Assembly: GCF_963921235.1 (NCBI RefSeq)
Contig: NC_086107.1
Span: 86,428,001 to 86,492,000 of the forward strand
Direction: 5' to 3'
DNA from: Mobula hypostoma
Taxonomy: Eukaryota
DNA: 64,000 nucleotides
In this document: one piece after another, positions 2,275 to 52,622 of the stretch
Layout of the letters: every line of letters begins with the position of its first letter
How positions within the stretch are numbered: the stretch's first letter is position 1
The notes under the pieces: model-generated
Told to the model about the DNA's origin: nothing
The model's input: only the letters and a program-made list of their open reading frames with translations
The model's database searches: none
Made by a program: the position numbers and the translations under genes

Positions 2275-2298
2275 TTTGGTTTCGGGTCTTTACTGCAT

Positions 2299-3069: not shown

Positions 3070-3899
3070 CTCTCTCCCGAAAAACTCTCCGATTCCGATT
3101 AAAATAGGACATCCCCGAGACCCAGACCGCTCTCTGTCTGTGCCCGAGGCCGGATTCTCTGCTGTAAAGAAAGTTTGGTCCGAATTAAACGCGGCAGTTT
3201 CTATATCAACCCCTTTCACTGCTGCACTGACCTCATTCTTCCCCGGGATCGGGACATTTTCTCTGTTTCCCGACTGAAATATTGAAATCAACTAAAAAAT
3301 CGCGGTTAATTCCCACTTCAGGACTGAGCTGGGGAACTGTGCCATCCCGGAGCAGGCAAATTGTTTTATTTTCTCTCGGTGGGGATGAAAAATCCAGCGA
3401 TGTGTTCGGACTCACAAACACAGTGATACCAGTCTAAGCCCTCAGGCCTCTTAGCACACTCTCCCTGACACACCGTTCAGATCTGTACATTCACAGCACC
3501 AACTGTTGGCCCGGTGCACCGTTCCCAGCGCAGGTTTTCCTCTCCGCTCGACCTGCTCTCCGGATTATCGCGTGTTATTTGTAGATTCCCAGATCAGTAA
3601 TACCCAGAGGCCGGCGCTCCTCACCACCCTGATCCCTTGGTTTGGGTTGGATTCATCTCCTCTTTACGTGGGCTGCACGTTCAGTTTAAATAGGAGATGA
3701 AGACCATTTGCTGTGTCCTGCTGTTTGATCAACAAAATTCGATAGAATTGACACAAACCGCCCTACTTTTCTGTTCAATTCCTCAATTAATCTCACAAAT
3801 CTGTTCTAGTTCCTTGGAGAGGTAACCCAGAGATTTGATGAGTGTATCACAGCCACATCGTATTATATCATTCAGAAGAAAAGCAACAATGAAACATAA

Positions 3900-6320
3900 G
3901 TTAGACAAAGACCCCATGGAACTGCAGTCTGGAAGGTTAGATGACATGGGAATCCAGGGAGAGGTAGAAGTGGATAGATACTCGGCTTGATGTTAGGAGA
4001 CGGGGGTGATGGTCGAAGGTTGTTTACGGGACAGGAGATCAGTGAGTAGTGACGTGCCGGGCCCATTGCTTTTCATCATTTTATATAAAGAATTTGGATG
4101 AGAGTGTACAAGACATGGGTAGTAAGTTTGAAGATAACACTAAGCTAGCCGGTAGAGTCACAGAGCAACACAGCGCAGATAAATTGTCGACATAACGTCG
4201 CAACTCCCGGATTAAACGCCCTGACTGATGCTAAACACGTCTTTCTCTGCCCAGTCTGCTGGTGACGCCACTTTCAATGAACAAAGCTCTAGTACTCCTC
4301 AATCCCTCTCTCCCGTGACACCCCCGAGTTCCCCACCATTCCATGTATAAACCCTGCCTTGGTTTGACTTTCCAAAATACATCATCTGAATTGTAATCCA
4401 TTCGTCAATTCTCCTTTACACTTCAGTAACTGAGCAAGATCTCCCTGTAGTCATCTTCACTATCAAAAATACTTCCTTATTTTGTGTCCTCCACAAACTT
4501 ACTGGTAAAAACCTTGAGCGTCTGTAATATAGCGTTTATATTACAAAAGAATAACAAGGGTGCCAACACTGACACCCGTGGTACATCACGAGTCCCCAGC
4601 CTCGATTCCTCACACACACAAAGCTATGCCAACTACTCACAATCAGACTCCATCTGTGCAAATACTGGTAGATTCTGTCCTCACAATCCCCTACAGTAAA
4701 TGCCCCACTCCTGATGTCAGTCTGAGTGGCCTGTCGTTCCCTGGCTTATCCTTGCTGCACTTTTTAAACAATTGAATGACAATAGCACATTCTGGTCTTC
4801 AGCAACTTCAGCAGTGGCTAATGATGAAGCCAGTGTCTCCACCAGAGAGGTGGGTGAGTGGGAGGATACTTAGTAAATTGAGTTTAATGTGGGAAAATGT
4901 GAGGTTATGCCCCGTGTAGGGGGAATCAAAAGAGAGACTATAATTTATGTGGAGAGAAACTGCACATGAATGAAGTACATAGGGCCTGGGTGTTAAGTTA
5001 CATACAAACAGCAGACAGGTATAGTGAGTGGCCAATGGTGAATGGTGCATTGATGTTGATTGTTGGGTGGTTGGTGCAGAGAAACAGAGAACTGTTGTTA
5101 CAGTGTCAGACAAGTGAAGAGATAGATTTTGGGAAGTTAAAACAGGCCAGGGCATACACAGTGAATGTCATGGTCTGGGAGAGTGTGAATGAACAGCAAG
5201 CTCTTCGGATACTGATATTGTACTCGGTTCACTGAAAGTAGCAACATCGGGAGACAAGGTAGTGACGAAGGTGCACAGTATGTTTACTTTCATGGGCAAA
5301 GGCTGTGAGAGGAGTTGGGACATCATATTGTACAAATCATTCACTGGGCCACACCCAGAGTTCCCTGTGCAGTTCCAACACCACACTAATGGAAGGATGT
5401 GATTAAACTGGAAAGATGTAGAAAACACTCACAGAAATATTGCCTGTGCTGGAGGGCTTGAGTTACAAGGAAAGATTGGATGGACTGGGACTGTTTTCCC
5501 TGAAGCGAAAGCGCTGAAGAAAAATCTGATAGAAATTTATAAAACTATGAGAGGTCTAGATGGGATAGAGAATCAGGATCATTTTCCCAGGGTGGAAATA
5601 TCAAACATGAGAAGACATTGCTTTAAGATCACAGGGCGAGAAGTTAAAGGAGTTATGCAGGGTAAGTAATAGTTTGGTTTTATTTACAGAGTGGTACGGC
5701 CTGCCATGGGGGAATGGTGAAAGCAGATATGATTATGACATTTCAAAAGCTTTTAGATGGGAAATGGAAAGATATGAATCACATGCAGGCAGAAGAGATT
5801 CAGTTTCCTTTGGCATTGTGTTCAGCACAGACGTTGTGGGAAGAAGGGCCTGTTCCTCTGCTGTACTGTTCTGTGCTCTGGGTGAGCAACAGTGACAGAA
5901 AACTCTTTAGCTGGAGGCACAGCACAGGTATATCTGTGGAAATGAGTGGGGCCCTCAAGAGTATTGAAGAATTCATCTCTGTTTTAAATCGATGTCCCCA
6001 TATTCTGAGGCATGCCCTCTGGTCCAAGTCTGCCCCACTATTGAAACATCCTTTCCACAACCACTCTAAGCTTTTCAATATTCAAAAGTTTTCTATGAGA
6101 CCCCATAATTCTTCCAATCAAATGCTCCTCGTATGTTAACACTTTAAAGCCCGGGATAATTTCTGTGAACCTCCTCTCGATCCTCTTTAGTGCCCAGCAC
6201 ATCTTTTCTTGGATAAGTGAGGCACCAGAGGACTGGAGGGTAGCCAGCGTTCTTCCTATGTTTAAGAAAGGTTCTGAAAATAAAGCAGGAATTACAGGCC
6301 AGTGAGCCAGACGTCAATTC
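3900..6320. mobile_element. Mosaic of decayed CR1-type LINE fragments on both strands
   Basis: RT remnants (GPLLFII, KFEDNTKL) and a CR1-like 3' end near 5820-5880. Confidence 0.75.
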
Positions 6321-7479
6321 AAGTTTCATTGTCCTCAACCATACATGAATACTCATGAATACAGTCAAACAAGACAGCGTTACTGCAGGTCAAGGTGCTA
6401 AAAACACATTAACAACAGTCACATACAAAAACTCATTCACGGAATAAAAGAATCCCAAGGTCCCCACACCCACAACATTGCAGCTTGATGCCCATGCCTG
6501 GTATATACAAATCAACAAACTCGTTTAGAATATCAGTAAAATACGATGCAGATTACACATGTATATAGTCCAGACCCCACAGCCCCTCAGTATCATCTGT
6601 CAATCTGCCCCAATACCCACTAGGTGTTACTGTGGGTTAGAGGACCACTCCTGGCATCTACAGGCACATATAGAATATTAGTAAAAATACAACAACACAG
6701 AATATGTATGTATATAATCCAGACCTCCAAGTCCTCTGAGATCATCTCTCGACTGGCACAATGCCTGACGCCCAATACAACCAGACAAATATATCTGTAT
6801 ATAGTCCAGACCCCGCACTCCAATTGAAATCTTCAGCTGACCACATCTGTGCTACTCTTCCACCTGTAGCGCATGCCCCCAGTGGCTGAAAATCAAGTGA
6901 CTTTGCAGCTTGAGGCCCAATTCCATTGAGTGATGCCAACAAATCTGCAGCAGACCTCAACAGAGCTTGTCTTCTGCCGAGTAAAGCCCTGGGAGGGCAG
7001 TGCCAACTTCATTCTGGATCCTGTGCCACACCACCCGCGGTGAAGCACCGTGGCTTTGTCCCTTCACTCCTGTGGCTGCAAACAGGTGACACCATGGTTT
7101 CAGCCCGAGACCTCGCTGCAACTGAGGTCAGCAAGATTCCCTGCCTCCGCCCCTGCTCTCATCCAATAAATCAGCGAACTGAACTTGCGGTGTACCAGAT
7201 TAACAATGTCGAAAGGAAAGGGGTCTTGTGATCACAAGAAAATCGACCATAACGGCCACTCGCTATTTGACTGTGAGCCTCCATCGACTTGGGCAGCAGC
7301 TCCTTCATTATCTCCACCAATGAGCAACTCGCTGATGCTGCACACCTGAGCTACTTTGAGATCTCAACATTTAGCAATATCTTGTGATCATTTGAAGTAG
7401 GTTTAAGTAGAACATTAGCACCTTTTGTTGACCCCATAGAAGATGCTGCAACCAGTCACACCAGCATCTTGCCAGAAGT

Positions 7480-9790
7480 AGTGGGAAGATTATTGAAAGG
7501 TATTCTAAGGGACCAGATATACGAGTATTTGACTAGACATGGACTAATTAAGGAGAACCAGCATCACTTCATGCATACCTTCTTCAGGAAGTAGCAGGAA
7601 ATTAGGTTAAAGCAGTGGATGTTGTCTACCTGGATTTTAGCAAGGCATTTGACAAGGACCAGCATGGGAGGCTGGTCAGGAAGGTTCAGTCACTTGGCAA
7701 TCAAGATGAGGTAGTAAATTGGATTAGGCATTAGTTTTGTGGGAGAAGCAAGAGAGTGGTAGTAGACGGTTGCCTCTCTGACTGCAGGCCTGTGACTAAT
7801 GATGTGCTGCAGGGATTGATGTTGGGTCTGATGCTGTTTGTCATCTATATCAATGATCTGGATGACACATGTGTTTAACTGGAATAGCAGATTTGCAGAT
7901 GACACCAAGACTGGGGGTGTAGTGGACTGTGAGGAAGACTTTCAGAGCTTGCAGCGGAATCTGGACCAGCTGGAAAAATGGGCTGAAAAATGTCAGATGG
8001 AATTTAATGCAGACACGTGTGAGGTGTTGCACTTTGGTAGGACCAACCCGGGTAGGTCTTACACGTGAATGGTAGGGCACTTGGGAGTGTGGTAGAACAA
8101 AGGGATCTGGGAATGCAGGTTTATATTCCATTGAAAGTGGCATCATATTTGGATAGGTTTGTAAAGAAAACTTTTGCCACATTGGCCTTCATAAACCGAA
8201 GTATTGAGTACAGGAGATAGGATGTTATGTTGAAGTTGGAAAAGACATTGGTGGGGCCTAATTTGGAGTATTGTGTACAGTTTTGGTCACCTATCTTCAG
8301 GAAAAATGTAAATAAGGTTGAAAGAGTTCAAAGGAAAATTTACAAGGACAGTGCTAGGTCTTCAGGACCTGAGTTAAAGGAAAATTGAATAGGTTAGAAT
8401 TTCATTCCTTGGAACATAGAAGAATGAGAGGAGATGTGTGTTGCGTACCCCGTAACTGGGTTGCCAAACCAGCAGAAATGGATCACTCAGTTGGAGTCTG
8501 GATTACTAGAACAGAGAAAGTTTTATTAAAGAAACAAGCAACACAGTAATCGAAAGGATAATAAATGCAACAGTTCAGCAATGATAAACATACATGTGCA
8601 CAGAATTAAGATAACAGCATCAATCAAGCTCTATCGTTGTCTAGGGGTAAATGACCAATTTCAAAGTGACACAAAAGTCCAGTTCGATTTAATAGTTCAG
8701 TTCACAGTAATCGTTGCCATGGCGATGGACAACGTGGTGGTGGGGGAGAGAGAGAGAGAGAGAGAACGGGAACGACTGATCATTCAGAAACGGCTTCCAC
8801 TCACAGACCGGCGATATTGCTCATAAGCAGCTTTCGAGCGGGTCCTTTGTGATGTCACCTGAGGTCACCGACTGTGACCCTTCCTCCAGATGCGGTCAAT
8901 CCTCTGCAGTGAACCCGGCACCCAAGCGAGGGTGGACACACACCGGGTTCCCGCTGATCGTACCTTTCCACCCTGTGCGTTTGTGGCCCGGTACTTCCCA
9001 CCGACTCGTGAGAGGCGCACCGCTTCCAGGGTCTCGTTACCTCGGGTGTCGTGTGTGTGTCCTGCCTTAGCGAACCTGTCCCTTTTTATCCCCCTGCTGG
9101 GGTATCGCCTGTCCATTACTTCAAACAGATCAGGGTTCAAAGGGGGAGCCACTCCAGACAGCTCTCTCTCCCGTCCCTTCATTACACATCTCCAGATCGC
9201 CTGTCCATTACTTCAAACAGTTCAGGGTTCAAAGGGGGGAGCCGCTCCAGACAGCTCTCTCTCTCCCGTCCCTTCATTACACATCTCCAGATGCTGCTTC
9301 ATTGTTCCTTATCTCTCCTTCCCCTGAGGACAGGTGGCAGACCAACTGCTGATGCCACTGATGCTAACCCAGGCCAGCAAACATCTTAATTTTATGTGTA
9401 TTCTCGTCACATGTGATAGAGGTATACCAAATTATGAGAGGTATAGACAGGATAAATGCAAGCAGGATTTTTCCACTGAGGTTGGGTGGGATTACAACTA
9501 GGGATCATGGATTAGGGTGAAAGGTGAAAAGTGAAAAGTTTAATGGGAACATGAGGAGGAACCTCTTCACTCAGAGGTTTGGTAGAGTGTGGATCGAGCT
9601 GCAAGTGCAAGTGGTGCTTGCAACCTTGATTTCAATGTTTAAGAGAGGTTTAGATAGGTACATGGATGGTGGGGTTATGAAGGACTATGGTCCCAGCGCA
9701 GGTCGATCGGAATAAGCTGTTTAACTGGTTTCGGCACAGGCTAGGATAGGCCAATGGGCCTGTTTCTGTGCTGTACTTTTCTATGACTTT
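7480..9790 (+). mobile_element. CR1 LINE ORF2 3' portion, split by a solo LTR
   Basis: FADDTK motif and QMEFNADTCEVLHFGRTN. The sequence rejoins across 8439-9411. Confidence 0.85.
8439..9411 (-). mobile_element. Solo LTR related to the 11.6-17 kb Gypsy LTRs
   Basis: TG...CA termini and a 4-bp TSD TGTG (8435-8438 / 9412-9415). Terminal similarity to the LTR at 11601, and an internal ~93-bp tandem duplication at 9104-9290. Confidence 0.9.
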
Positions 9791-11600
9791 ATAAGGGGCC
9801 AAAAATGCTCAAAATATTCCAAGCGTAATCTCACCAATGTACTATAAAGCCTCAGAATTATACCCTTGCTTTTATATTCTAGACCTCTTGAAATGAATAC
9901 GAACGTTGCATTTGCCTTCCTTACCACCAACTCAACCTGCATGTTAACCTTTCGGGAATCCTGCACAAGGACTACCAAGTCTCTATGCACCTTTGATTTT
10001 TGAACTTTCTCCCCATTTAGGAAATAGTCTACACCTTTATTCCTTCTCCCAAAGTGCATGAGCATGCACTTCCCTGCACTATATTACATCTGCCACTCCT
10101 TTGCTCCTTCTTCCAAATTGTCCAAACCCTTCTACAGACTCTCTGCTTCCTCAACACTTACTGCTCCTCCACTTATCTTTGTACTGTCTGCAAACGTAGC
10201 CACTAAGCAATCAATACTGTCATCTTAATCATTGACCTATAATATGAAAAGGAGTGATCTTAATACTGAACCCTGTGGAAAATCACTAGACATCAGCAGC
10301 CAAAGGACCTCCTTTATTCTGCCTGTCAACCAATCTTCAGAACTCTGGGGTGTTGTCCATCAAATTGGTTGATTTATCTACCTTTAGACGTTTCAACATT
10401 CCAAGTACCTTCCCCTTAGTCATAGCAACTACCCTCACTCTGCCTCCAACACTCTCGAATTTCTGGCACACTGTTTCTGACTTCTAGTTGTCTATACCAG
10501 TGAGGACTAACATAAAATATTGATTAAGTTCATCTCCCATTTCTTTGTCACCCATTACTAACTCTCCTGTGTCTTTTTCCCATCGAGCAATATCCTCCCT
10601 CATCTCTTGGGATGAAGTACCAACCTGATTTTCCCAATCGCTCTGCATTTTGAATTTCCACATGACTATTGTAACATTGCCCTTATTATATCCCTTTTCT
10701 ATCTCCCAATATAATTTGTTTCCCACATCCTGACTACTGTTCAGGGGTCTGTCTAAAACTCCCATCAGGGTATTTTTACCCCTGTAGTTTCTTAATTCTA
10801 CTCACAAGAGCTCTGCATCTTCCAATTCTATGTGACTTCTTTTTAGGATTTAATTTAATTTATTACCAACAGAGCCACCCCATCCTCTCTGCCTAACTGC
10901 CTACCTTTGGATTTTAAGCTCTCAACTATGATCTTCTTTCAGCCACGACTCAGTGAGACTAACTAGGAATATGCCAGAACCTGTTGGGGGCAGAAGTTGA
11001 CAAACCACCTGGACCAGATGGACTAGTACGCAGAGTACTGAAACAGGAGGCGGAAGAGATTGTGGAGGCATTAGTAATGATCTCTCAAGAATCACTGCAT
11101 TCTGATATGATTCTGAAGGACTGGAAAACTGCAAATTTTACTCCACATTTTAAGAAAGGAGGGAGGCAAAAGAAAGGGAAATATAGCTCAGTTAGAGTTT
11201 CAAGGGGGTGGAGGCGTAGCAGACTTGGGGGTGGGATTGATGGACTATTCCAGATTTGTGGTGGTGGTGGATAGTTTGAGGGTCCAGAGGAACTTAGTGA
11301 GAATGATTTTGGGACTGAAAGGGTCAATGTACAAGGAGTGCTTGATGGCCCTGGGCGTGTAGCTGCTGGAGCTTAGAAGAATGAGAAGGATCTTGAATAT
11401 TGAAAGACCTCGATAGAATGGATGTTTCCGTACAGATGAGAGTCCAGGACCAAAGGGCACAGCTTTTGGAACAGAGATGTGGAATTTCTTTAGCCAGTGG
11501 GTGGTGAATCTGTGATATTCTTTGCTACAGGTGGCCATGGAGGCCATGTCATTGGATATATTTAAAGTGGAGATTGATAGGTTCTTGATTAGGAAGGGTG
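9790..11600. mobile_element. CR1 fragments (minus to ~10950, then plus)
   Basis: HFGRRNKGVDYFLNG and PGPDGL...DWKTANFTPHFKKG remnants. Confidence 0.8.
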
Positions 11601-14600
11601 TGTTACGTACCCCAGAAGGAGTTAAATAACCAGCGGAAATGGAAAACACCTTGGAGTCTGGTATTGCTGTTAACTAATGCTCGTTTATTAGTAACTACAC
11701 AATACAGTAATATAAATGCAGATATATCAAACAGGTTAGCAATGATTTTATATATATAAGTGTGGAAATATATAAAAGCCAAGCTTCTTCAAGCTTAGGA
11801 GGTAAATGGATACAGCCTTACAATGATTGGTAAATGAAATCAGTTCCGTTCATGGTATTGAATTGAGTAGTGTTGGAAAGAGAGGGAGGTGTCTAGTTCT
11901 TCAGGTGAGCTGATCCCATTGATCTTCCCATTGTCCTCCGAGACTTCCAAGTTAGCCAAACTTGACCAACTTAAGAGCACCATCTTCAAGTGATAGTCTA
12001 CCAACGCAGGCAAAGGTTAGACACTCAGGTAGACTCCACAGGGTCGCTCTTTCACGCACTAATAATCACAGATCAATCCCTCACAATCGCTCCTCAGTCC
12101 CACATTCATGGGTACCTGAACAGGATAGTGGTAACTTCACCACACCTTAGTGCGTCTGCGTATCCTGCGAAACAAGGAATTATACTGGTTTAAATACTGT
12201 TGTGCTGAACACCAGCTGTCCATCAAGTAGCTCCTTCCTTCTCTCTCTGTGTAGGAATTCAGAAGCTGGCAGCCCTTGCAGAAATCCCAAACAAACCGTG
12301 AGCAGTCTTTGCCCCTCTCTCTCTCTCTCTCTCTCTCTCAATAACAAGTTGTTTGTGCTGTACAGTTGCATGCTCTCTCTCTTATTTTAAAAGCACAGTC
12401 CATAATGAATAACTCCGGATATCGTCACAGTTCCCTCCTTTTGTGAAAAATTTTGATCAAAGAGCAGAATTTTTGGTTTAAAAGTAGATTACAAAGTTTG
12501 AAACAATACATGTATAATTATCAGACAGCAGAGTAATATGTGTACAACTTCTAACTTAACATCTGGATAAACAATCAGCTCTAATGCTGTCAGTACTTTT
12601 CACATGTTTTATTTTCAGGTCGTATTCATGCAAGATCAGACTCCAGTTTAATAAACTTCTACTCTTATCCTTCATCTTAGTTAGAAACACTAATGGATTG
12701 CGATCCGTGTAAATCACCAGTGGTTTCTGGGCACGACAAACAGACTTCAAAATGTTGTAAAGGCAGAATGAGTGATAGCAACTCCTTTTCAACAGTGGAA
12801 TAATTTTTCTGGTGCACGTTATATTTCTTCGAGAAGCTTCATCACTAGCGTCTGTCGCTATAGAGAATGGTTTTGAAAAATCAGGTGCTTTTAGCACAAG
12901 TTGGTAACACAATAGTTTTTAGTCGTTCAAAGGCTTCCTGGCAAAGCTCACTCCATACAAACCTTTCACTCTTCACAAGTAGTTTCGTTAGGGGGAGTGC
13001 GATATCTGCGAAGTTCCTACAAAACTTACAGTAATACCCAACCATTCTTAAAAACCTTCTTAAAGCTTTCTTGCCTGTCAGAATGGGAACCTCAGCAATA
13101 GCTTGAATCTTGGCCTGTACCGGAGCCAGTTGGCCCTGGCCTAATACGTAGCTAAGATAAGTAACAGTAGCATGACCAAACTCACTATTGGCAAGGTTAA
13201 CAGTAAGATTGGCCTTAGAAAGGCTGTCAAGTAGCTTTTCTACAGCCGCAATGTGCTCTTCCCACATGTCATTCCATACAACCAAATCATCATTATAAGC
13301 CCCTGTATTTTCTAAACCTCGCTTTCCAATCATACCAGAACTTCATCTTAATTTGAGAGTTTCGCAAATTCTGCTTTGCAAGGTCACAAGCCTTGTTAAG
13401 CCTATCTCGAAACTCCAAAACATAATCCAGCACACTAACACATACCTTCGGATCAGACCACTGTTCTCTGAGCAAGGTCAAAGATCCTCTGGGCCCGTGA
13501 CGAAAAACAAGCTCAAACGGACTAAACCCTAATGATTCATGAATTGAGTCTCTAACAACAAAGAGAAGTAAGTATATACCTTCATCCCACTCCCTGTTAT
13601 TCTCATAATAGTAGGTTTTAATCGTTGTCTTCAAAGTGGAATGGAACCGTTCCAAGGCTCCTTGGGACTCCGGGTGGCATGTAGATGACACAATTTGTTT
13701 AGCCCCCAGCTCAGAAACTATATGGTGGAATACTCCCGATGTAAAGTTACTGCCCTGGCCGGATTGAATTTCTTTGGGCAAACCAACCATGGTAAGAAAC
13801 TTCATGAGATCCTTCACCACTGTTTTAGCCTAATATTTCGAAGAGGAACTGCCTCGGGGAACCTAGAAGTGGCACACATTTTAGTTAACACATACTGATG
13901 GCCAGCTGCAGTTTTTGGCAGTGGGCCAACACAATTCCCTATGATTCGGGAAAACGGTTCACCAAAAGCAGGTATTAGCCAAAGTGGAGCTTTTGGGATG
14001 GCCTGATTAGGTTTTCCCACCACCTGGCACATATGGCAAATTTTGCAATAATTCACAGTATCCTTCCTCACACTGGGCCAATAAAATTCCCTCATAATCC
14101 TGTGCACTGTCTTCTTTACCCCAAAATGTCACCTAAAGGGTTATTATGGGCTAGGTTTAAAACTTCAGCTCCGTAAACATTTGGGACCACAACTTGGTTC
14201 ACAATAGCCCAATCCTCAATTTCAAGCACAGTGGTTGGTCTCCTCTTCCTCAGTAACACCCCATCTTTAAGGTAGTATCCCACTGACTCTTTCTGAATTT
14301 CATCATCAGAGAGGGATGTCTCCTTTAAAGCCACAACTTCAGAATCTCGCTTCTGTTCGTCTATGAATTCCTTTCTAGATAAGGACAAGCCTTTCTCATC
14401 AGCCTTACTACCCTCTAAGTCCTGTTGGAATAGGGATAGTAGGAAAGTCTCTGATAAATCATCATGAGCATCAGCAGACTTTTTTGACAAGCTTCGAGTT
14501 ACTGCGCGTGCGGGGTGAACATCAGTATCCATGGCTGGGTCTTCAGCAGCAGGCTTGCTCGTTAGCTGCACTGCTGAATAAACATCACCCTGGATAAGCG

Positions 14601-15626
14601 TCAACCTACCCCCAATGTTTACTAAACTCAGCACTATTACCAGACTTACGAAAACCATTTGTATATTGTGAAAATTCCAAACAATCCATTTATTCCATTG
14701 TTACAACCTTCAGCTCAATCCGTCTCCATAGTAACCTCTTCAAATGGCCTCTCAAAACCAAAACAATCCTTTTTCTCCACATCACAATCGTGAAAAGCAA
14801 CTCCACAACTTTGAAGGTGTTTACATCCAAATGTTAAACCAAAATTCAGCAGAGTGGCACATACTTCTTCAGCAGGCTGCTGTCCGGAATGCAGGGTCAA
14901 AGGTCATGAAATCAATCCAAACTTCACAAGTTCTTTATTCAAAAGTCCAGAAACATATTCCTCAATATCTTCAATAATATTTACCTCAGCAATTTTCATC
15001 TCATCACCAACTTTTAGAACACAGTCTAATACAAGTGACTGGGAGAATCCTCAATTTCCACTGGTACCAAGGTTAGCCCCTTGTTCACTGAACCAAGATC
15101 ACCTGACACAAAAGGAATGCATTCCTTGTCAACCGAATCAGACACCTCAGACCCTAACTGAGCTTCAACACAAGGTTCAGTACCCTGTGAATCCACAGGT
15201 ACTTCAACAACCTGAACACAGGCAATTGGGACAGCTGCCTCTTCTAGGCTATCATCACTTGTGCCAGTTTCAAATTCAAGGTTACCCTGAACCTCCCAGC
15301 TACTCTCCAGAAAACTCATCTGGAGTAAACTCAACCTTGTGGGTTAAAACAACTTTGTCTGCTGTCTTAGCAGACCCCCGCAAGGTAGCGGCATCCTCTT
15401 GGTATTCATCTTGGTATTCCCTTACATCATCGGGGACACACTTCTTAACTTCTTCAATCAAGACAAGCTCTTTCGAGCTGCAAATATCATCAGGATCCAA
15501 CACTGGACCTCCCAGCTGCCACATCTCCCTCCCGAACTTTCTCTGTTTTGCTGCCTTCCTAGCCTCGAGTCGTTTTAATTGCAATTCATGCTTCATCCTT
15601 TATTTTGCCATCTAAAGCAAAAACTC

Positions 15627-15842
15627 AGCAACACTCACAACATGCTGGAGGAACTCAGCAGGTCAAGCAGCATCCGTGGAAACAATGAGTCAACACTTCG
15701 GGCTGGAACCCTTTGTCAGGACTCGGGTTCTGGCCTGAAACGTTGACTCATCATTTCCACGGATGCTGCCCGACCTGCTGAGATCCTCCAGCGTGTTGTG
15801 ACTGTGGCTTTGATCCCAGCATCTGCAGATTATTTTGTGTTT
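15627..15842. mobile_element. Palindromic Penelope-derived short element inserted in the Gypsy gag
   Basis: ~85-bp inverted arms (TGCTGGAGGAACTCAGCAGG...CCTGCTGAGATCCTCCAGC) with a hammerhead-like core. Confidence 0.7.
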
Positions 15843-16396
15843 ATGTAATGCAAAAGCTCAGCCTTGGTAGGTTTACCTTCTGCGAACATTTTCAACACAT
15901 CCTCAGTAAATTGCTTCTTCGAAATATAATATTCAACTATTTTTCTTTGAATTTCTACCTTAGTCATACCTTTCTTGACCTCCTTAAGTTCGAGTTCCTC
16001 AACAATTTTCCACAACTCATCCTTTCTAGCTCTCTTCAAAACCACAGGGTCTGGCCCTGCCAGAAAATCCTGATCATCCATGTCTGCCGTTTTTCCACGT
16101 GACCAAATCAAAAGGGATTTTCCCCAATCATTTCAAATAAGCCCCGAACAATTTGTTCAAATCCCAGACGCAGGCTGCAATTTTTGTTACATACCCTGTA
16201 ACGGGTTAAAGAATGAGCATAAATGGAAAACACCTTGGATATCAAACAGATTAGCAATGATTTTATATATATATAAGTGTGGAAATATGTAAAAGCCAAG
16301 CTTCTTCAAGCTTAGGAGGTAAATGGATACAGCCTTACAATGATTGGTAAATGAAATCAGTTCTGTTTGTGGTGTTGAGTTGAGCTGAGTTGAGTT

Positions 16397-16409
16397 AGAG
16401 AGTGTGAGA

Positions 16410-16459
<50 letters not shown>
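16397..16459 (+). repeat. (GA)n microsatellite inside the 5' LTR
   Basis: Direct inspection. It is short in the 3' LTR counterpart at ~11880. Confidence 0.95.
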
Positions 16460-16461
<2 letters not shown>

Positions 16462-17289
16462 TCTAGTTCTTCAGGTGAGCTGATGCCAATCTTCCCGTTG
16501 TCCTCCGAGACTTCCAAGTTAACCAAACTTGACCAACTTAAGAGCAACGTCTTCAAGTGATAGTCCACCAACCCAGGCAAAGGTTAGACAGACACACGGG
16601 TAGACTCCACAGTGTCGCTCTTTCATGCACTAATAATTACAGATTGATCCCTCAAAATTGATCCTCAGTCCCACACTCGTGGGCACCTGAACAGGATAGT
16701 GGTAACTTCTGCGTGTCCTGCAAAACACAAAATTATACTGGTTTAAATACTGTTGTGCTGAACACCAGTGTCCATCAAGTAGCTCCTCCCTTCTCTCTGT
16801 AGGAACTCAGAAGCTGGCAGTGTCCTTGCTGAAATCCCAGACAAACTGTGAGCAGCCTTTTCCTCTCTGTCTCTCTCAATAATAAGCTGTTTGTGCTGTA
16901 CAACTGCATGCTCTCTCTCTCTCTCTTTGAAAGCACAGTCCATAATGAATAACTCCGGGAGAAGAATAACAGGGAGAAGACGGGAGAATGGTGTCAATAA
17001 GGATGCCAAATCAGCCATGATGGATTGGCAGAACAGGCTCAATGGGCTGAATGGCCTAATTCTGCTCCTGTATCTTATAGTCTTGTGGTTATTCACACAA
17101 TTGTCACTGATCCCAGCTCCTGTACCTGTTCCTCTAACCGCCAGTTCCTCAATTCTTTAAATATTTATCTATCTCTGCCTGACATATACCCAGACATGAG
17201 GCCTCCCCACCCACAGGGGTAGAGAATCCCAGAGACTGTACACTCAGACATAGAATTCCAGAAATTTCCACACGTCTCCGTTTGAAATG

Positions 17290-17558: not shown

Positions 17559-18009
17559 ATAAGCTGCATGCTGAATCCAGAGGCAAGTTCACAATTGACT
17601 GTTGGTGTCGAACTCTGCAATTATTGCTGCTGCTTACCACATCCAGTTCTGCACCCTGGTCACTGGGACTGGGAGGTGCTTCTACTAAAGTTCACCTGTA
17701 ATGGGACTGGAGTTTAATGTTCTGGATCTCTGACACATAAATCAGTTCTATTTCAAACTCTGTCTCAGGTACCTAGTGAATTTACAGCACACACACCTTG
17801 TGTGCAGTCCGGAGAATATATATATATATATAAATCGGCCGAGCTGGTCCTTGCCACCGTTTCTGTTTCACAACAGCCCTTTTGAATCCATCCCTGCTGT
17901 TCCCCCCTCGCTCTCTGTGGTGGGTTCCAAACAGACACCATTCTGTGGGTGAAGTGGTTTCTCCTCAATTTTCTGCATGTGGAAGACAGGAGCAATATGC
18001 CTAAAATTC

Positions 18010-18305
18010 GAGAGTGTCAGGGAGCAGACGTGCGTGCAATTGCTATTACTAGGGAGAAGATACTTCGGAAACTGAAAGAGGAGAAGGTAGACAGGGCCAG
18101 CTGGCATGAGTAATGATCTTTCAGGAGTCAATGGATTTTGCCATGGTTCTGGAGGACTGGAAAATCGCAAATATCACTCCACTCTTCAAGAATGGAGAGA
18201 GGAAGAAAGGAAATTATAGGCCGGTTAGTTTGACCTCAGTTGTTGAGCATCGATTGTTAAGGACGTGGTTTCGGGATATTTGGAGACTCATGACTAAATA
18301 GGCCA
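18010..18305 (+). mobile_element. CR1 ORF2 fragment
   Basis: EDWKIANITPLFK...GNYRPVSLTS. Confidence 0.85.
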
Positions 18306-18309
18306 GGGT

Positions 18310-18490
18310 GGGTGGTATCGGGCCTTGAGCACCCGATACATGAAGGGTCTGCAGGTGAAATTCCGATTCACTGCTGACGAGCCCAGTAAGCCAATCAGAG
18401 AGCTGCCTTATTCACCAATGAACAGAGAGCAGAAAGGAAAGCGCCGAAAGTAACCGCCAGTTCTCCCGAGATTTGAAAAGCCCGCCGAAA
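18310..18490 (-). promoter_or_regulatory. Orphan histone-type promoter (E2F/CHR, two CCAAT, H4 site II-like motif)
   Basis: 18391-18487 aligns to the reverse complement of the H2A promoter at 50789-50895. Minus strand TCAAGGCCCGATAC at 18315-18328. Confidence 0.6.
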
Positions 18491-19056
18491 GTTATTTATT
18501 GATCTGTAGTCTGGAAAAGTATGCATTGAATCACTAATTCGGTGAAGACTTATTTTACTTAGCAATTGGAATGTTTCTAGTTATTGAGTTTCGAAAATTC
18601 GACCCACAGTTTATATTGGCGGTGGGTCCGTGTATACCGGTCTCTTCTCAAACTGCGGGCGAAGGCGAGGTTCCAACGAGACTATTTTCCTTCTGTGAAA
18701 AAACCGGAATTCCAACATCTGCAGACTCGTATCCCCATGAAACTATCATGGACTTGGTCAGAAATGGGACTGGTTACCAAATGGAAGAACTGCAATTATT
18801 AAAACCCATTCTCCAGCCCCAAATACCTGGAACACTTGCGCACAATAACCATGGTTGGGGTGTGGGACAGGGACACACGAACAGTTATGACTCCTGTTAA
18901 CCCAGCGACACCCAACTACTGATTCTCTGTTTTGAGTGTGGTCGGCCGTGTTAGAAGGGTTAGTGAGCAGCTGTAATGTCTTATTGAAGAAAACTCCCAC
19001 AGGGAAAGGACAGAAGGGAATGGCGTGATTAACAAAAGGGCAGTGAACAGGAATTG

Positions 19057-19098
19057 ACAGCCCTTTTCTCTGCCGGATTAGTGGCTCTGAAAAGAGCC
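19057..19098 (-). terminator. Histone 3' stem-loop and HDE of H3 copy 2
   Basis: GGCTCTTTTCAGAGCC at 19083-19098. Confidence 0.95.
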
Positions 19099-19127
19099 TT
19101 TTGTTGTGCTTGGTGCCGAGGTCGGGT

Positions 19128-19544
<417 letters not shown>

Positions 19545-19608
19545 TCAGCAGTGCGATTACAGCCTGAAATATCAGGATTGAAGTGTCAGAGCAGACGCTG
19601 GGTCTGGC

Positions 19609-19858
19609 TTTTAAAGAGTTGATGAAGGGCCGCCCATCTCCCCTTCTGATTGGTTGGAATGGAGATGTCCATCATAGGGTCCCAACGGTGCGATTGGATG
19701 CCTTTGCTTAATTAGTTTGAAGCTGGCCGACGGGGTGGGGGGGGCGTGGGGGTGAAATTATTACTTGTTACCAAATATGGAAACTGGTGACTGAGGGTCA
19801 GAATTCCACCAATCTGGCTGCAGATTGGATCCCCGGTCAATTTCAAATCGCCCGCCAA
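19609..19858 (-). promoter_or_regulatory. H3 copy 2 promoter with CDE/CHR-like element
   Basis: TTTTAAAA, two GATTGG, and TTGGCGGGCGATTTGAA at 19842-19858. Confidence 0.75.
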
Positions 19859-20957
19859 TTTCTAAAGCAGCCGGAGCTAGTTTCTTACAATGAATAGAAA
19901 TCATGAATTATCAAATATTACTTTCATTTAAAGAATCGTTTTCTTTCAATTCGCTGAAACGAATGTTTGCATATTCAGCGAATAGCTTCTCGAGGTGAGT
20001 GCATTCGCTTCTGCCGGAAACAGGACAGGCAGAGGATTGAGATCAATTATATTTATTGCGTTTACTGAAGAGTTTTTGGAGAAAACAAAGCCGCAAAAGG
20101 ATTGCATGAGCCCACACTGAACTGAAGTATTTATAGAAACATATAAATAATTGCAAACAAATAATTACATTCTTTATCTCGTCTCGCACCAAGTCCCTGC
20201 AAACTGATGCGACCTGACCTGCCGGAGAGAGACAGAGTCGGAGTTATAGAGCAGAGAGAAGCCCCTCATCTTCCAGCTCCGTCCCAACCGCGAATTTCCA
20301 ACGCTTAATCCCAACATACAATGGAAATTCAGCGCTCCGCACAATCCTTCAGATGCGCGATTTCTTTATTGAATCAGAATCGGGTTTAATATCACCGGCA
20401 TATATCGTGAGATTTATTAACTTAACGGGCAGCAGTACAATGCAATATAGGAAATGATAATATAGGAAAAGTAAATAAATACTTACAGTAAGTATAGATA
20501 TGTATATTAAATAGTTAAAGTACAAATAGTACAAAGACAGTCATAGCATGCCATCGGGTAATTTCTGTATGTTTCATCCCTCTCCAGTCCATTCCCAGAG
20601 GCCGATCCCTCTCCCTAAATCTCTCCTCACAGATAGTTCAGCAGTTTATTCATATTAACCATGAATTAGGGAACTTCTCTGGTGGGCTTTGAGCTGTGAG
20701 ACAGGGATTCTCCGCCAGTGTTCCCATCTCCCGACATCAAATGAGAAAGAAACGGCCTTTGAACGGAGACTGAAGCGGAACACATCCGTGTCCGACTGAG
20801 TCTCGGTCCGACCATCCGATACTGTATTTTATTTCAGATAGTAGGGAAGGGACGGTATCGCCGAATGTCAGCGGGGCACCGGGGATCCCGGGTTTTCTGA
20901 AAGTAGTTGGTACTGACATCTAAACCGACCAGGATCTGGAATCGCGCGATTCTGGAT

Positions 20958-20998
20958 CAGCTCTTATCTGGGAGATGTGGGTGGCTCTTAAAAGAGCC
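20958..20998 (-). terminator. Histone 3' stem-loop and HDE of H1 copy 2
   Basis: GGCTCTTTTAAGAGCC at 20983-20998. Confidence 0.95.
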
Positions 20999-21022
20999 TT
21001 TGGTTTCGGGTCTTTACTGTAT

Positions 21023-21643
21023 TTACTTTTTGGCCGCTGTCTTGGCTTTCACAGATTTTGCCTTCGGCTTGGGTTTTGCCGACTTCTTGGCCACCTTGGG
21101 GGCTGCGACTTTCTTCGGACTCTTGGGCTTCTGCGCGGTCTTCTTGGTCGCTGTTTTCTTAGCTGCCGCTTTTTTAACCGCAGTTTTCTTAACCCCCTTG
21201 GTCTTGGCGGGAGATTTCTTGGCACCCGTTTTCCTGGCCACAGATTTCTTGGTCACTGCCTTCTTGGTCTTAGGTGCCTTGGTCGCTGGTTTCTTCGCTT
21301 TTTTCACGACTTTCCCGGTATGTTCTTTTTTAGCGGCTCTCAAGGAGCCGGAGGCACCTGCGCCCTTAGTGTGAACCAGGGTGCCTTTATCCAATTTTCT
21401 TTTAATGGTCAACCTGATCTGACCTTTCAGCTTTTGTACATCGACGCCGCTGCTGGCCAAACTCTTCTTTATCGCGGCTACGGACACCCCTCGCTGACTG
21501 CGGCAATCGGCCACAATCTTGTCGATTTGATCGCCCAGTTTGGGACCGGCTGACTTTGTCCGGACGGCGGCCTTCTTCTTCTTGGCAGCCTTGGGTGTGG
21601 TGGCGGGTGCCGCTGGTGGAGCCACTTCTGCGGTCTCGGTCAT
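21023..21643 (-). CDS. H1: Linker histone H1, 206 aa
   Basis: MTETAEVAP start at 21643. Paralog of copy 1 with several substitutions and a 1-aa deletion. Confidence 0.96.
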   Translation of the reverse strand: MTETAEVAPPAAPATTPKAAKKKKAAVRTKSAGPKLGDQIDKIVADCRSQRGVSVAAIKKSLASSGVDVQKLKGQIRLTIKRKLDKGTLVHTKGAGASGSLRAAKKEHTGKVVKKAKKPATKAPKTKKAVTKKSVARKTGAKKSPAKTKGVKKTAVKKAAAKKTATKKTAQKPKSPKKVAAPKVAKKSAKPKPKAKSVKAKTAAKK

Positions 21644-21718
21644 CGTCGGAAACTGCACAAACTCTCTCGAACTCTGTAGTGAGTGAGAAATGAAGCGAGA
21701 GGCGGCGGTGCTGAGCAA

Positions 21719-21790
21719 TTTAAAGGCAGCGAGCGGACGGGGCGGAGACATCCTGCAGTCAGCTCCCGGCCGCTCCGTCTCTCTGTGTTT
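21719..21790 (-). promoter_or_regulatory. H1 copy 2 promoter
   Basis: TTTAAA, GC box, and AAACACA at 21784-21790. Confidence 0.75.
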
Positions 21791-22619
21791 CTCTCTCCCG
21801 AAAAACTCTCCGATTCCGATTAAAATAGGACATCCCCAAGACCCAGACCGCTCTCTGTCTGTGCCCGAGGCCGGATTCCCTGCTGTAAAGAAAGTTTGGT
21901 CCGAATTAAATGCAGCAGTTTCTATATCAACCCGTTTCACTGCTGCACTGACCTCATTCTTCCCCGGGATCGCGACATTTTCTCTGTTTTCCGACTGAAA
22001 TATTGAAATCAACTAAAAAATCGCGGTTAATTCCCACTTCAGGACTGAGCTGGGGAGCTGTACTATCCCGGAGCAGGCAAATTGTTTTATTTTCTCTCGG
22101 TGGGGATGAAAAATCCAGCGATGTGTCCGGACTCACAAACACAGTGATACCAGTCTAAGCCGTCAGGCCTCTTAGCACACTCTCCCTGACACACCGTTCA
22201 GATCTGTACATTCACAGCACCAACTGTTGGCCCGGTGCACCGTTCCCAGCGCAGGTTTTCCTCTCCGCTCGACCTGCTCTCCGGATTATCGCGTGTTATT
22301 TGTAGATTCCCAGCTCAGTAACACCCCGAGGCCGGCGCTCCTCACTGCCCCTAAACCTTGGGTTAGGGTTGGATTCATCTCCTCTTTACGTGGGCTACAT
22401 TTTCGGCTCAAACAGGAGACCAAGGCCGTTATGGTCTCCAGCTGTTTGATCAGCAATCTTGGATATAATTGACCTGCCTACTTTTCTGTTCAATTCCTCA
22501 GTTAATCTCCCAAATCTGTTCTAGTTCCTTGAAGAGGTAACCCAGAGATTTGATGAGGGTATCACAGCCACATCGTATTATATCATCACAAGAAAAGCAT
22601 CAATGAAACATAAATTAGA

Positions 22620-25360
22620 CAAAGACCCCATGGAACTGGAGTCTGGAAGGTTAGATGATCCAGGGAGAGGTAGAAGTGGATAGATACTCAGCTTGATGTT
22701 AGGAGACAGAGGAAGATGGTCGAAGGTTGTTTACGGGACTGGAGATCAGTGAGTAGTGACGTATCACAAGGATCGGCGCTGGGCCCATTGCTTTTCATCA
22801 TTCATATAAAGGATTTGGATGAGAGTGTACAACACACCGATGGAAAGTTTGAAGATGACACTAAGCTAGGCGGTAGAGTCATAGAGCAACACAGCGCAGA
22901 TAAATTGTCGACATAACGTCGCAACTCCCGGATTAAATGCCCCGACTGATTGATGCTAAACACGTCTTTCACGGCCCGGTCTGCCGGTGACGCCACTTTC
23001 AATGAACAATTCTCTTGTACTCCTCAATCCCTCTTTCCCGTGACACTCCCGAGTTCCCCACCATTCCATGTATAAACCCTGTCTTGATTTGACTTTCCAA
23101 AATACGTCATCTGAATTGTAATCCGTTTGTCAATTCTCAGTTACACTTCAGTAACTGAGCAAGATTTCCCTGTAATCATCTTCACTATCAAAAATACCTC
23201 CTTATTTTGTGTCCTCCACAAACTTACTGGTAAAAACCTTGAGCGTCTGTAATATAGCGTTTATATTACAAAAGAATAACAAGGGTGCCAACACTGACAC
23301 CCGTGGTACATCACAAGACCCCAGCCTCGATTCCTCACACACACAAAGCTATGCCAACTACTCACAATCAGACTCCATCTGCCCAAATACTGGTAGATTC
23401 TGTCCTCACAATCCCCTCCAGTAAATGCCCCACTCCTGATGTCAGTCTGAGTGGCCTGTCGTTCCCTGGCTTATCCTTGCTGCATTTTTTAAACAATTGA
23501 ATGACAATAGCACATTCTGGTCTTCAGCATCTTCAGCAGTGGCTAATGATGAAGCCAGTGTCTCCACCAGAGAGGTGGGTGAGTGGGAGGACACTTATTA
23601 AATTGAGTTTAATGTGGGAAAATGTGAGGTTATGCCCCGTGTAGGAGGAATCAAAAGAGAGACTATAATTTATGTGGAGCGAGACTGCACATGAGTGAAG
23701 TACATGGGGTCTGGGTGTTAAGTCACATACAAACAGCAGACAGGTACAGTGAGTGGCCAATGGTGAATGGTGCATTGATGTTTATTGTTGGATGGTTGGT
23801 GCAGAGAAACGGAGAACTGTTGTTACAGTGTCAGACAAGTGAAGAGATAGATTTTGGGAAGTTAAAACAGGCCAGGGCATACACAGTGAATGGCAGGGTC
23901 CTGGGGAGTGTGAATGAACAGCGAGATCTTCGGATAGTGATATTGTACCTGGTTCACTGAAAGTAGCAACATCGGGAGACAAGGTAGTGACGAAGGTGCA
24001 CAGCATGTTTACCTTCATCAGCAAAGGCTGTGAGAGGAGTTGGGACATCATATTGTACAAATCATTCATTAGGCCACACCCAGAGTTCCCTGTGCAGTTC
24101 CGACACCACACTAATGGAAGGATGTGATTAAACTGGAAAGATGCAGAAAAGATTCACAGAAATATTGCCTGTGCTGGAGGGCTTGAGTTACAAGGAAAGA
24201 TTGGATGGACTGGGACTGTTTTCCCTGAAGCGAAAGAAGCTGAAGAAAAATCTGATAGAAATTTATAAAACTATGAGAGGTCTAGATAGGATAGAGAATC
24301 AGGATCATTTTCCCAGGGTGGAAATATCAAACATGAGAAGACATTGCTTTAAGATCACAGGGCGAGAAGTTAACGGAGTTATGCAGGGTAAGTAATAGTT
24401 TGGTTTTATTTACAGAGTGGTACAGTATGCCATGGGGAATGGTGAAAGCAGATATGATTATGACATTTCAGAAGCCTTTAGACAGGAAATGGAAAGATAT
24501 GAATCACATGCAGACAGAAGAGATTCAGTTTCCTTTGGCATTGTGTTCAGTCTCCTTTAAAGACCTCCTTTATTCTCCCTGTCAGTCAATCTGCAGAATT
24601 CTGGGGTGTTGGCTATCAGATCTACCTTTAGATATTTCAACGTTCCAAGTACCTTCCCCTTAGTCATAGCAACTACCCTCACTCTGCCTCCAACAGTCTT
24701 GAATGTCTGGCATACTGTTTCTGACTTCTAGTTCTCTATTGCAGTGAGGAGCAAACACAAAATATTTATTAAGTTCACCTCCCATTTCTTTGTCACCCAT
24801 TACTACCTCTCCTGTGTCTTTTTCCCATCGAGCAATATCCTCCCTCATCTCTTGGGAAGAAGTACCAACCTGATTTTCCCAATCGCTCTGCATATTGAAT
24901 TTCCACATGACTATTGTAACATTGCCCTTATTATATCCCTTTTCTATCTCCCAATATAATTTGTTTCCCACATCCTGACTACCATTTGGAGGTCTGCCTA
25001 AAACTCCCATCAGGGTATTTTTACCCCTGTAGTTTCTTAATTCTACTCACAAGGGCTCTGCATCTTCCAATTCTATGTGACCTCTTTCTAGGATTTAATT
25101 TAATTTATTACCAATACAGCCACCCCAACCTCTCTGCCTAACTGCCCATCCTTTTGATACAATGTGTATCCTAGGATTTTAAGCTCCCAACTATGATCTT
25201 CTTTCAGCCATGTCTCATTGATGCCCACAACATCGTAACTGCCAATCTCTAACTGCACCAGAAACCTTCTATCTTATTCTGGATACTGTGTGCATTCAAA
25301 TATAACACCTTTAATCCTGTGTTCATCACTATTTTCAATTTGCCTCCATATTACACTTCA
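22620..25360. mobile_element. CR1 fragment mosaic (duplicate of the copy-1 flank)
   Basis: VSQGSALGPLLFII and KFEDDTKLGG remnants. Confidence 0.8.
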
Positions 25361-50788: not shown

Positions 50789-50976
50789 TTGGCGGGTTTT
50801 TCAAATGACAGGTACTTTTGGATAGTGACGGTTATTTTGCGCGCTTCTCCCGCTGCCGTCTGATGATTGGAGAATTGGACAGCTCGCTGATTGGGTTTCT
50901 CCAAATCACCAATTGGAGAAAGCGCTGCACCACCAATCGTAAATGCCCTTCCCCAATCCTCCCGAAAGTTATAAAA
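50789..50976 (+). promoter_or_regulatory. H2A-1 promoter
   Basis: TTGGCGG-GTTT-TTCAAA, multiple CCAAT/ATTGG boxes, and TATAAAA at 50970. Confidence 0.85.
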
Positions 50977-51489: not shown

Positions 51490-52622
51490 TAATGACTGGG
51501 GTGACTCGGCTGTTTCCGTATTAAAGTCTCAGGCTAAAGCGCTTTTCCTTCCCCCAAAATAACTACATTTATTTGCGCACAGAGCGCTCTCGCTCTTTCT
51601 CTCTACCCCTTCCATCCCAGTACCCAATTTTATCGAAAATTAATAGTTTTTTCCTGCTGTCGCCTCTGCCTTCTGGATGACTGTAGAGCGGTGCTTGATT
51701 GGTATTAAATTGCCAAATTTGATTAGGGATTTCCTAATTCTCAGCGGAAATGGCCGGTCAGAGAGCGCCCAATGAACAGGGAGCAAGACAAGCGCCAAAA
51801 CTAACGGCCAGACCACTAAAATTGTGAAATTTGTAACGTTCGCCAAGAGAAAGCTGATTTTCTAGAACAGTCCGAAAGTGTATTTGTATTATACGATTTG
51901 TGAATGTGGCCACATGATCCGATCCATTTATAATAGACTGTGTGAATTAAGTTTAGTGTTCAAAGTAAAATTATCAAACTGTGTAGACAATATACAGCCT
52001 TGAAATTCTTCTTGCAGAAACCCACAAAACAAAGACAATTGAATCCACGAAAAAACACACATAACAAAGACCGATGAACAACTAATCCGCAAGAGGAGAA
52101 ATCGCGCAAATAATTTAAAAAAAACAAATAATTAATAGAACGCGACCCGCAGAGTCGTCTTAAGCTAATTCTCCGATATGAGAGTAACTGTGAATTCAAT
52201 TTTCCTTTTAATTACCGATCGGCACAAATACTGAATCATAGAACATGACAGGATTTTGTTTTAATTTAAAACGCAGGAGGTTATGGAGGGTTCGCTGTTG
52301 AAGTACGATCAGGGCCGGGATTGCGATGTGACTCAGGACAGTCCCAGCACAGCCAACTGTTGCTGATAAACAGCATCAGTAACGGCAAATATCTACCTCA
52401 CGACGATGCACTTTGTGTAAAGGTTTGTGTGCATATCTGAAGACCGAAACAAGCTGATAACAGAAAGGGAAAATGCTCCGTGACAGTACAATGGGTAGTG
52501 GGAGATCCCGGGATTAAAACAGGCAGATGGATTGCAAACCTTGATCGCTATAAATTATAATTACTTCTAAACTGAAAATCTGCAAGGAAAGGTTAGTTAT
52601 TATTCACTGCTGAAATATTGGA

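What the first reader, a model, noticed from the sequence alone, without database searches (positions are those of the whole stretch)
18305..18490. Orphan promoter that may be the remnant of a deleted H4 gene
Seen: 18391-18487 is a colinear reverse-complement homolog of the H2A distal promoter (two CCAAT, then TTTGAAAAGCCCGCC). Further along the minus strand is TCAAGGCCCGATAC, resembling the H4 site II/HiNF-P element (human TCAATCTGGTCCGATAC). About 10 bp later, where TATA and the CDS should follow, the sequence switches to CR1. Inference: the ancestral unit was H1-H3-H4 on one strand and this copy lost H4. An intact H4 is predicted just left of position 1.
Basis: partly seen in the sequence, partly recalled or inferred. 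Interest (0 to 1): 0.7.

Follow-up and report, generated by a model that had tools for sequence, protein, structure and literature searches.

The report
Truncated H2A-type histone promoter relic
Downstream of a histone H3 gene in a devil ray lies the upstream half of a histone promoter with no core promoter and no gene; it is ordinary gene-cluster decay, it resembles the ray's H2A promoters, and nothing tested supports the proposal that it once drove an H4 gene.

Summary
The window is a Mobula hypostoma histone cluster.

**Module.** Positions 18387-18512 (minus strand) align colinearly with the distal promoter of all three H2A genes. They also align with three inverted promoter copies lying 3' of each H2A (E 1e-7 to 1e-10). 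The orphan is a third, old lineage, 62-68% identical to both groups. Its GC box, E2F-like site and two CCAAT boxes are all intact.

**Proximal part.** The next 85 nt (18306-18390) match no histone promoter in the window and carry no TATA box.

**Junction.** At 18305 the sequence joins a high-copy LINE fragment that is cut off at its 3' side. This is a deletion or rearrangement junction, not an insertion end.

**H4 site II string.**
- It matches GGTCCGATAC at 9 of 10 positions, but the mismatch falls in the GGTCC core.
- Equal-scoring 17-mer matches occur about 65 times in the window.
- It forms one arm plus part of the loop of a rare 8-bp palindrome at the junction.

**H4 itself.** No H4 trace exists in the window. 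Related H1-H3 units have no third gene called.

**Verdict.** It is a promoter relic; the H4 origin is unsupported.

The parts
18387..18512 (-). Orphan distal promoter module, colinear with the H2A distal promoter and pointing towards lower coordinates
   Evidence: BLAST and local alignments to three H2A promoters and three inverted copies; 62-68% identity to both groups
18480..18486 (-). GC box (GGCGGGC on the minus strand)
   Evidence: Conserved in most copies; coordinates
18471..18479 (-). TTTTCAAAT block
   Evidence: Conserved in all seven copies, with TTTACAAAT in the inverted copies
18441..18449 (-). E2F-like site, TTTCGGCGC on the minus strand
   Evidence: An E2F motif together with CCAAT is a described H2A promoter design (PMC1198228). 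Binding was not tested.
18415..18419 (.). CCAAT box 1
   Evidence: aligned with ATTGG in the other copies
18391..18395 (.). CCAAT box 2; the last block that is homologous to the H2A promoters
18306..18390 (.). 85 nt of unassigned sequence between module and LINE; no TATA box
   Evidence: No significant similarity to the proximal parts of the H2A promoters or inverted copies (shuffle p 0.7-0.97), nor to any H3, H1, H2B or H2A upstream 400 nt; TATA search
18315..18339 (.). Perfect 8-bp palindrome GTATCGGG-N9-CCCGATAC at the junction.
   Evidence: the background rate of such palindromes is 0.045 per 100 nt in this window
17990..18305 (+). Fragment of a high-copy LINE (reverse-transcriptase N-terminal block), cut off at its 3' side at 18305
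   Evidence: Homology to 36531-36688, 33647 onward and 11037-11195; the other copies continue for more than 1.3 kb; contig depth
18509..19127 (-). 3' flank of H3 shared with the other H1-H3 unit (239-907). The unit homology starts at 18509, within about 10 nt of the outer end of the module.
   Evidence: A diverged paralogous contig spans 18396-18558, so the adjacency is older than the duplication.
19128..19538 (-). Histone H3 gene of unit 2, with its 3' stem-loop at 19057-19103
50791..50900 (+). Working copy of the module in front of H2A (also 54618-54725 and 61115-61245)
51640..51850 (-). Inverted, gene-less copy of the whole H2A promoter 3' of H2A (also 55440-55690 and 61960-62250)
   Evidence: CCAAT boxes partly destroyed

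Best explanation
The stretch is the surviving upstream half of a replication-dependent histone promoter of the type that drives H2A in this ray. It carries a GC box, TTTTCAAAT, an E2F-like site and two CCAAT boxes. It sits about 570-700 bp beyond the 3' end of H3 and points away from it. Its core promoter and gene are gone. After the last CCAAT box come 85 nt that match nothing, and then a LINE fragment that is itself cut off at its 3' side, with a small palindrome at the joint. This is the signature of a deletion or other non-homologous rearrangement. Shown: the homology, the lack of a TATA box and gene, and the truncated LINE. Inferred: the module once drove a gene on the minus strand, that gene was most likely an H2A, and the module is now inert as a promoter.
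For: Module homology to three H2A promoters and three inverted copies. In this window only H2A genes carry the module; the H3, H1 and H2B upstream regions do not. CCAAT plus E2F is a described H2A promoter design (PMC1198228). All motif blocks are intact although overall identity is only 62-68%, as expected if the module worked for much of its history. The LINE is 3'-truncated at 18305 and a rare palindrome lies at the joint. No histone coding remnant lies between the two H1-H3 units. A second, roughly 80% identical paralogous contig holds the module contiguous with the H3 flank, so the module was part of the ancestral H1-H3 unit. Earlier notes, not tested here, report a ghost H2A locus with its promoter kept and its gene replaced by a retroelement (s1-142648), and a tandem block ordered H4, H2A, H3, H1, which puts H2A next to H3 (s1-142821).
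Against: The 85 nt after the module are not homologous to the H2A proximal promoter. The inverted copies still show that homology at similar divergence, so a simple cut within an H2A promoter is not enough; a second event or a different proximal promoter is needed. The orphan is no closer to the real H2A promoters than to the gene-less inverted copies. H1-H3 units in two Mobula species and in Hypanus have no third gene called. Any loss would therefore be old, or there never was a gene. Gene tables can also miss genes. No H4 promoter of this species could be read for comparison.
Confidence: 0.55

Rival explanations
1. One reading: the relic is an H4 promoter. An H4-specific site II lay just upstream of a TATA box and an H4 gene, and both were deleted where the LINE now starts.
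For: The 85 nt after the module are not H2A-like, which leaves room for another gene's proximal promoter. H3 and H4 lie on one strand in another cluster of this genome. Earlier notes report H4 convergent with H2A elsewhere (s1-143916, not tested).
Against: The mismatch falls in the GGTCC core. The ATAC tail is not part of the conserved H4 box: mouse Hist4h4 has TCAGGTCCGCTCCC (PMC3128520). The 17-mer match is at chance level. The string is one arm plus loop of a junction palindrome. One contig of a sister species skips 18236-18336. All other copies of the module precede H2A or nothing. There are no H4 traces in the window. No H4 is called left of the window or after H3 in related units.
Confidence: 0.12
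2. A gene-less duplicate from the start. The module was copied without a gene, like the three inverted promoter copies 3' of each H2A. Alternatively it is such a 3'-flank copy of an H2A that once lay to its left on the + strand. No gene on the minus strand was ever lost.
For: Three of the six other copies are gene-less inverted duplicates on the same strand as the orphan. The best single BLAST hit is one of them, at 78.6% over 70 nt. Related H1-H3 units have no third gene called.
Against: The orphan keeps both CCAAT boxes and a perfect E2F-like site, whereas the inverted copies have lost or mutated theirs. Its left flank is not homologous to theirs. The truncated LINE and the palindrome show that something was removed at the gene side.
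Confidence: 0.2
3. A free-standing regulatory element that still works: an NF-Y/E2F-bound enhancer or a histone-locus-body seeding site serving the neighbouring H3-H1 unit, kept by selection without a gene of its own.
For: All five motif blocks are intact at 62-68% overall identity. The stretch is 98% identical over 18301-18475 in a third species. The module lies only about 0.6 kb from H3.
Against: The other H1-H3 unit in the window lacks it entirely. The species compared are too close for conservation to mean anything. There are no expression or chromatin data.
Confidence: 0.1

Closest known systems
Vertebrate replication-dependent H2A promoters (CCAAT boxes plus an E2F site; Oswald et al. 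1996 as cited in PMC1198228)
   Same: CCAAT boxes combined with an E2F-type motif. Colinear sequence homology to the three working H2A promoters in this window.
   Different: In mouse the E2F motif lies between CCAAT and TATA; here it lies upstream of the CCAAT pair. The orphan has no proximal CCAAT pair, no TATA box and no gene.
H4 site II / H4 box bound by HiNF-P (PMC5706932; bioRxiv 10.1101/664615)
   Same: A 9-of-10 match to GGTCCGATAC, preceded by TCAA, on the strand towards which the module points.
   Different: The core reads GGCCC, not GGTCC. TCAA lies 3 nt closer to the core. There is no TATA box and no H4 gene downstream. The match is at chance level and forms part of a palindrome. 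The H4 box is reported to be restricted to H4 promoters, whereas this module is otherwise found at H2A.
Ghost H2A locus elsewhere in this genome
   Same: The distal promoter is retained, while the core promoter and coding sequence are gone and a truncated retroelement sits in their place.
   Different: That locus is reported to keep its 3' flank and to carry a Penelope-like element. Here no 3' flank is recognisable and the element is a LINE with a CR1-like reverse-transcriptase block (class not tested).
Inverted promoter copies 3' of each H2A in this window (s1-143780)
   Same: The same module, on the same strand, without a gene.
   Different: Those copies keep homology through the proximal CCAAT pair to the TATA position but have lost distal CCAAT boxes. 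The orphan shows the opposite pattern.

Membership tests
H2A-type histone promoter of this genome | Colinear distal module: GC box, TTTTCAAAT, E2F-like site, two CCAAT boxes | tested here: met
H2A-type histone promoter of this genome | Proximal CCAAT pair, and a TATAAAAA box 73-74 nt after the distal CCAAT block | tested here: not met
   No similarity in 18306-18390. The only TATA-like string is LINE-derived TATTTAG at +89.
H2A-type histone promoter of this genome | An H2A coding sequence about 135 nt downstream of the module | tested here: not met
   tblastn finds only the three known H2A genes
H4 promoter (site II / H4 box) | GGTCC core of the H4 subtype-specific element | tested here: not met
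   The sequence reads GGCCC. That GGTCC is the core is taken from my own knowledge and from the mouse Hist4h4 primer in PMC3128520.
H4 promoter (site II / H4 box) | A TATA box just downstream, and an H4 start codon about 80 nt from the box (bioRxiv 10.1101/664615) | tested here: not met
   LINE sequence begins 10 nt away. No H4 peptide motifs occur anywhere in the window.
H4 promoter (site II / H4 box) | Other copies of the same module precede H4 genes | tested here: not met
   In the window three copies precede H2A and three precede nothing. The rest of the genome could not be read.
H4 promoter (site II / H4 box) | H4 promoters of Mobula share sequence with 18306-18520 | not testable with these tools
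   No DNA was returned for the assemblies, and there is no H4 gene in the window
Ordinary LINE insertion end | Intact 3' end of the element at the boundary (LINEs are normally cut at the 5' side) | tested here: not met
   The fragment stops in the reverse-transcriptase N-terminal block, while other copies go on for more than 1.3 kb. The boundary is therefore a deletion or rearrangement joint.

The most novel reading that the evidence does not exclude
The module is not debris but a free-standing NF-Y/E2F element kept without a gene of its own. Together with the inverted copies that bracket every H2A gene, it would form a set of promoter-derived enhancers, boundaries or histone-locus-body seeding sites spread through the ray histone cluster. 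This would resemble the enhancer and insulator that flank sea urchin H2A (PMC2794192).
Probability: 0.08. Interest if true: 0.55.

Novelty: new member of a known kind. Interest (0 to 1): 0.2.

Why it matters
It matters little. It is one more example of decay and rearrangement in a transposon-rich histone cluster, and it corrects an attractive but unsupported H4 story. There is modest value for reconstructing how ray histone clusters were built. One promoter module occurs in three old lineages: working H2A promoters, inverted gene-less copies, and this orphan. The H1-H3 unit was duplicated with a boundary right at the module's outer edge.

Tried and rejected
1. A MAFFT alignment hinted that AAGGCCCGATAC might align with AAGGCCGAATGC just after the H2A TATA box. 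Local alignment with dinucleotide shuffles gave no support (p about 0.9), so I dropped the idea.

2. I asked whether LINE homology runs on past 18305 into the palindrome (TGGTATC against the family's TGGTTTC, with a 2-nt gap). The result is ambiguous: 9 of 16 positions.

3. I looked for H4 fossils between each H2A 3' end and its inverted promoter copy, and left of the orphan. Six-frame translations and six short H4 peptide motifs with up to 2 substitutions found none.

4. I tried to fetch DNA of other H1-H3 units through exact-protein look-ups. Only gene tables came back, because the assemblies are too large. I did not look up H3 or H4, whose proteins are identical in humans, so as not to fetch human contigs.

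5. The read-laying run showed a paralogous contig (946 nt) holding the module and running on for 448 nt beyond 18396, but its letters are not shown.

6. Pfam on the LINE pieces found no hit.

7. Papers giving the exact site II sequence (PMC1168814, PMC262391) are not held.

I kept the H3 coding sequence and stem-loop out of the reads calls, and the N-masked parts of H2B were left alone.

Full report
**Setting**

The window is part of a histone cluster of the devil ray Mobula hypostoma. An exact-protein look-up places the H1 of 2302-2922 on a 117-Mb record of GCA_963921235.1, and the nearest H1 relatives are named Mobula hypostoma and M. birostris. The window holds:
- two H1-H3 units on the minus strand: H3 907-1317 with H1 2299-2922, and H3 19128-19538 with H1 21023-21643;
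- three H2A genes on the plus strand, starting at 51028, 54853 and 61375;
- two partly N-masked H2B genes.

Eight histone 3' stem-loops confirm these genes. The two H1-H3 units are a segmental duplication, 239-5825 matching 18509-24550 at 88-94% identity. There is no H4 gene in the window.

**Check of the observation**

CCAAT lies at 18391 and 18415, and TTTGAAAAGCCCGCC at 18472-18486.

Read on the minus strand, 18387-18512 is colinear with the distal promoter of all three H2A genes. BLAST gives E-values of 1.7e-8, 2e-7 and 7e-7, and local alignments cover about 105 nt. The shared blocks are a GC box, TTTTCAAAT, an E2F-like site (TTTCGGCGC in the orphan) and two CCAAT boxes.

They lie 3' of each H2A, on the same strand as the orphan: 51640-51850, 55440-55690 and 61960-62250. 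These are inverted copies of the whole H2A promoter, down to the position of the TATA box, without a gene.

Over the module, the pairwise identities are as follows:

| Comparison | Identity |
|---|---|
| Orphan vs working H2A promoters | 66-68% |
| Orphan vs inverted copies | 62-68% |
| Working promoters vs inverted copies | 61-67% |

The orphan is therefore a third, old lineage, not a recent copy of either group. It keeps all motif blocks, whereas the inverted copies have lost or mutated CCAAT boxes.

**The gene side of the module**

All significant homology stops at the second CCAAT box (18391). The next 85 nt (18306-18390) show no similarity to the following:
- the proximal parts of the H2A promoters or of the inverted copies (shuffle p 0.7-0.97);
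- 400 nt upstream of any H3, H1, H2B or H2A gene, on either strand.

There is no TATA box. The only TATA-like string is TATTTAG at +89, and it belongs to the LINE.

From 18305 leftwards the plus strand is a fragment of a very abundant interspersed repeat with a reverse-transcriptase-like N-terminal block. Its summed contig depth in public runs is 1e4-1e5. Other copies in the window (36531-37920 and 33647-34967) run on for more than 1.3 kb beyond the point matching 18305. The fragment is thus cut at its 3' side. LINE insertions normally keep their 3' ends, so the joint is a deletion or other rearrangement, not an insertion end.

**The H4 site II likeness**

The string TCAAGGCCCGATAC is at 18328-18315 on the minus strand. 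Four points count against reading it as H4 site II.
About 65 sites in the window score as well, so about 0.05 are expected in 90 nt.
- The 10-mer match alone is rarer (about 6 sites), but its single mismatch is in the GGTCC core.
- The ATAC tail is not part of the conserved box. Mouse Hist4h4 reads TCAGGTCCGCTCCC before its TATA box (PMC3128520). The H4 box is a 17-bp element about 80 nt upstream of the ATG and is restricted to H4 promoters (bioRxiv 10.1101/664615); HiNF-P binds it (PMC5706932).
- The string is the left arm plus six loop bases of the only 8-bp perfect palindrome in the region: GTATCGGG-N9-CCCGATAC at 18315-18339. Such palindromes occur at 0.045 per 100 nt in this window, and this one lies directly at the LINE joint. 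An inverted duplication made during break repair would explain it as well as H4 ancestry does. That is an inference.

In the public runs, a contig of a third species holds 18301-18475 with four differences. One contig of a sister species joins 18235 to 18337, skipping the string.

**Which gene, if any, was lost**

In the window the module goes with H2A or with nothing, never with H4, H3, H1 or H2B.

No H4 peptide motif and no extra H2A, H3 or H1 fragment occurs anywhere in the window.

DNA of other loci could not be fetched, but the gene tables could.
- Over the 7.7 kb left of the window, only a fused H3-H1-H3 model is listed, with no strong H4-type hit.
- Other H1-H3 units of M. hypostoma, M. 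birostris and Hypanus sabinus have no third gene called for 8-10 kb after H3.
- A different cluster has H1(+), H3(-), H4(-), so arrangements vary.

A diverged paralogous contig (about 80% identity) holds 18396-18558 in one piece. The module was therefore joined to the H3 flank before the unit 1 / unit 2 duplication. The homology between the two units begins at 18509, within about 10 nt of the module's outer end, and unit 1 has unrelated sequence there.

Earlier notes of this scan, not tested here, describe three related cases:
- a ghost H2A locus whose distal promoter survives while a retroelement replaces the gene (s1-142648);
- an H2A promoter split from its TATA box (s1-144975);
- a tandem block ordered H4, H2A, H3, H1 (s1-142821), which would put H2A next to H3.

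**Verdict**

The stretch is a truncated relic of an H2A-type histone promoter module next to a rearrangement joint. I put about 0.55 on a lost H2A-type gene, 0.2 on a gene-less duplicate, 0.12 on H4, and 0.1 on a still-working free-standing element.

The weak point of the H2A reading is that the 85 nt after the module are not H2A-like. The weak point of every reading is that no paralogue outside the window could be read. This is ordinary cluster decay and of low interest.

Noticed in passing
window 51640-51850, 55440-55690, 61960-62250: The inverted copies 3' of each H2A cover the whole H2A promoter, including the proximal CCAAT pair and the TATA position (now AGGTAGGG or AGGCAGAGG), not just the distal module. 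Only about 160 nt separate them from the H2A 3' processing signal, and there is no coding trace in between.
   Followed up: partly
window 18297-18303 (minus strand): A LINE-derived TATTTAG lies 89 nt after the distal CCAAT block, close to the 73-74 nt spacing of the true H2A TATA box. It might allow weak antisense transcription into the LINE.
   Followed up: no
window 1-238: The sequence left of the unit-1 boundary is unrelated to the orphan and to anything else in the window. It holds a CT run, TATA-like strings and a palindromic ACTCCCGGAACTTCCGGAG (ETS-like), so it may be another promoter or the end of a transposon.
   Followed up: partly
window 11724-16958: An LTR retrotransposon with roughly 80% identical terminal repeats (11724-12418 and 16239-16958) and reverse-transcriptase and integrase reading frames on the minus strand fills much of the space between the two H1-H3 units.
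   Followed up: no
window 5826-10302 against 24551-24558: Unit 1 carries about 4.5 kb, mostly repeats, that unit 2 lacks. The duplication resumes at 10303-10956 = 24559-25221 and ends where a LINE endonuclease-like segment ends.
   Followed up: no
window 60303-60410: A short H2B-like fragment (74% identical to 52820-52927) in opposite orientation; probably a dead H2B piece.
   Followed up: no
left of the window (gene tables): The public gene models fuse H3-H1-H3 of neighbouring units into single 479- and 543-residue products. These are annotation artefacts and should not be read as real proteins.
   Followed up: partly
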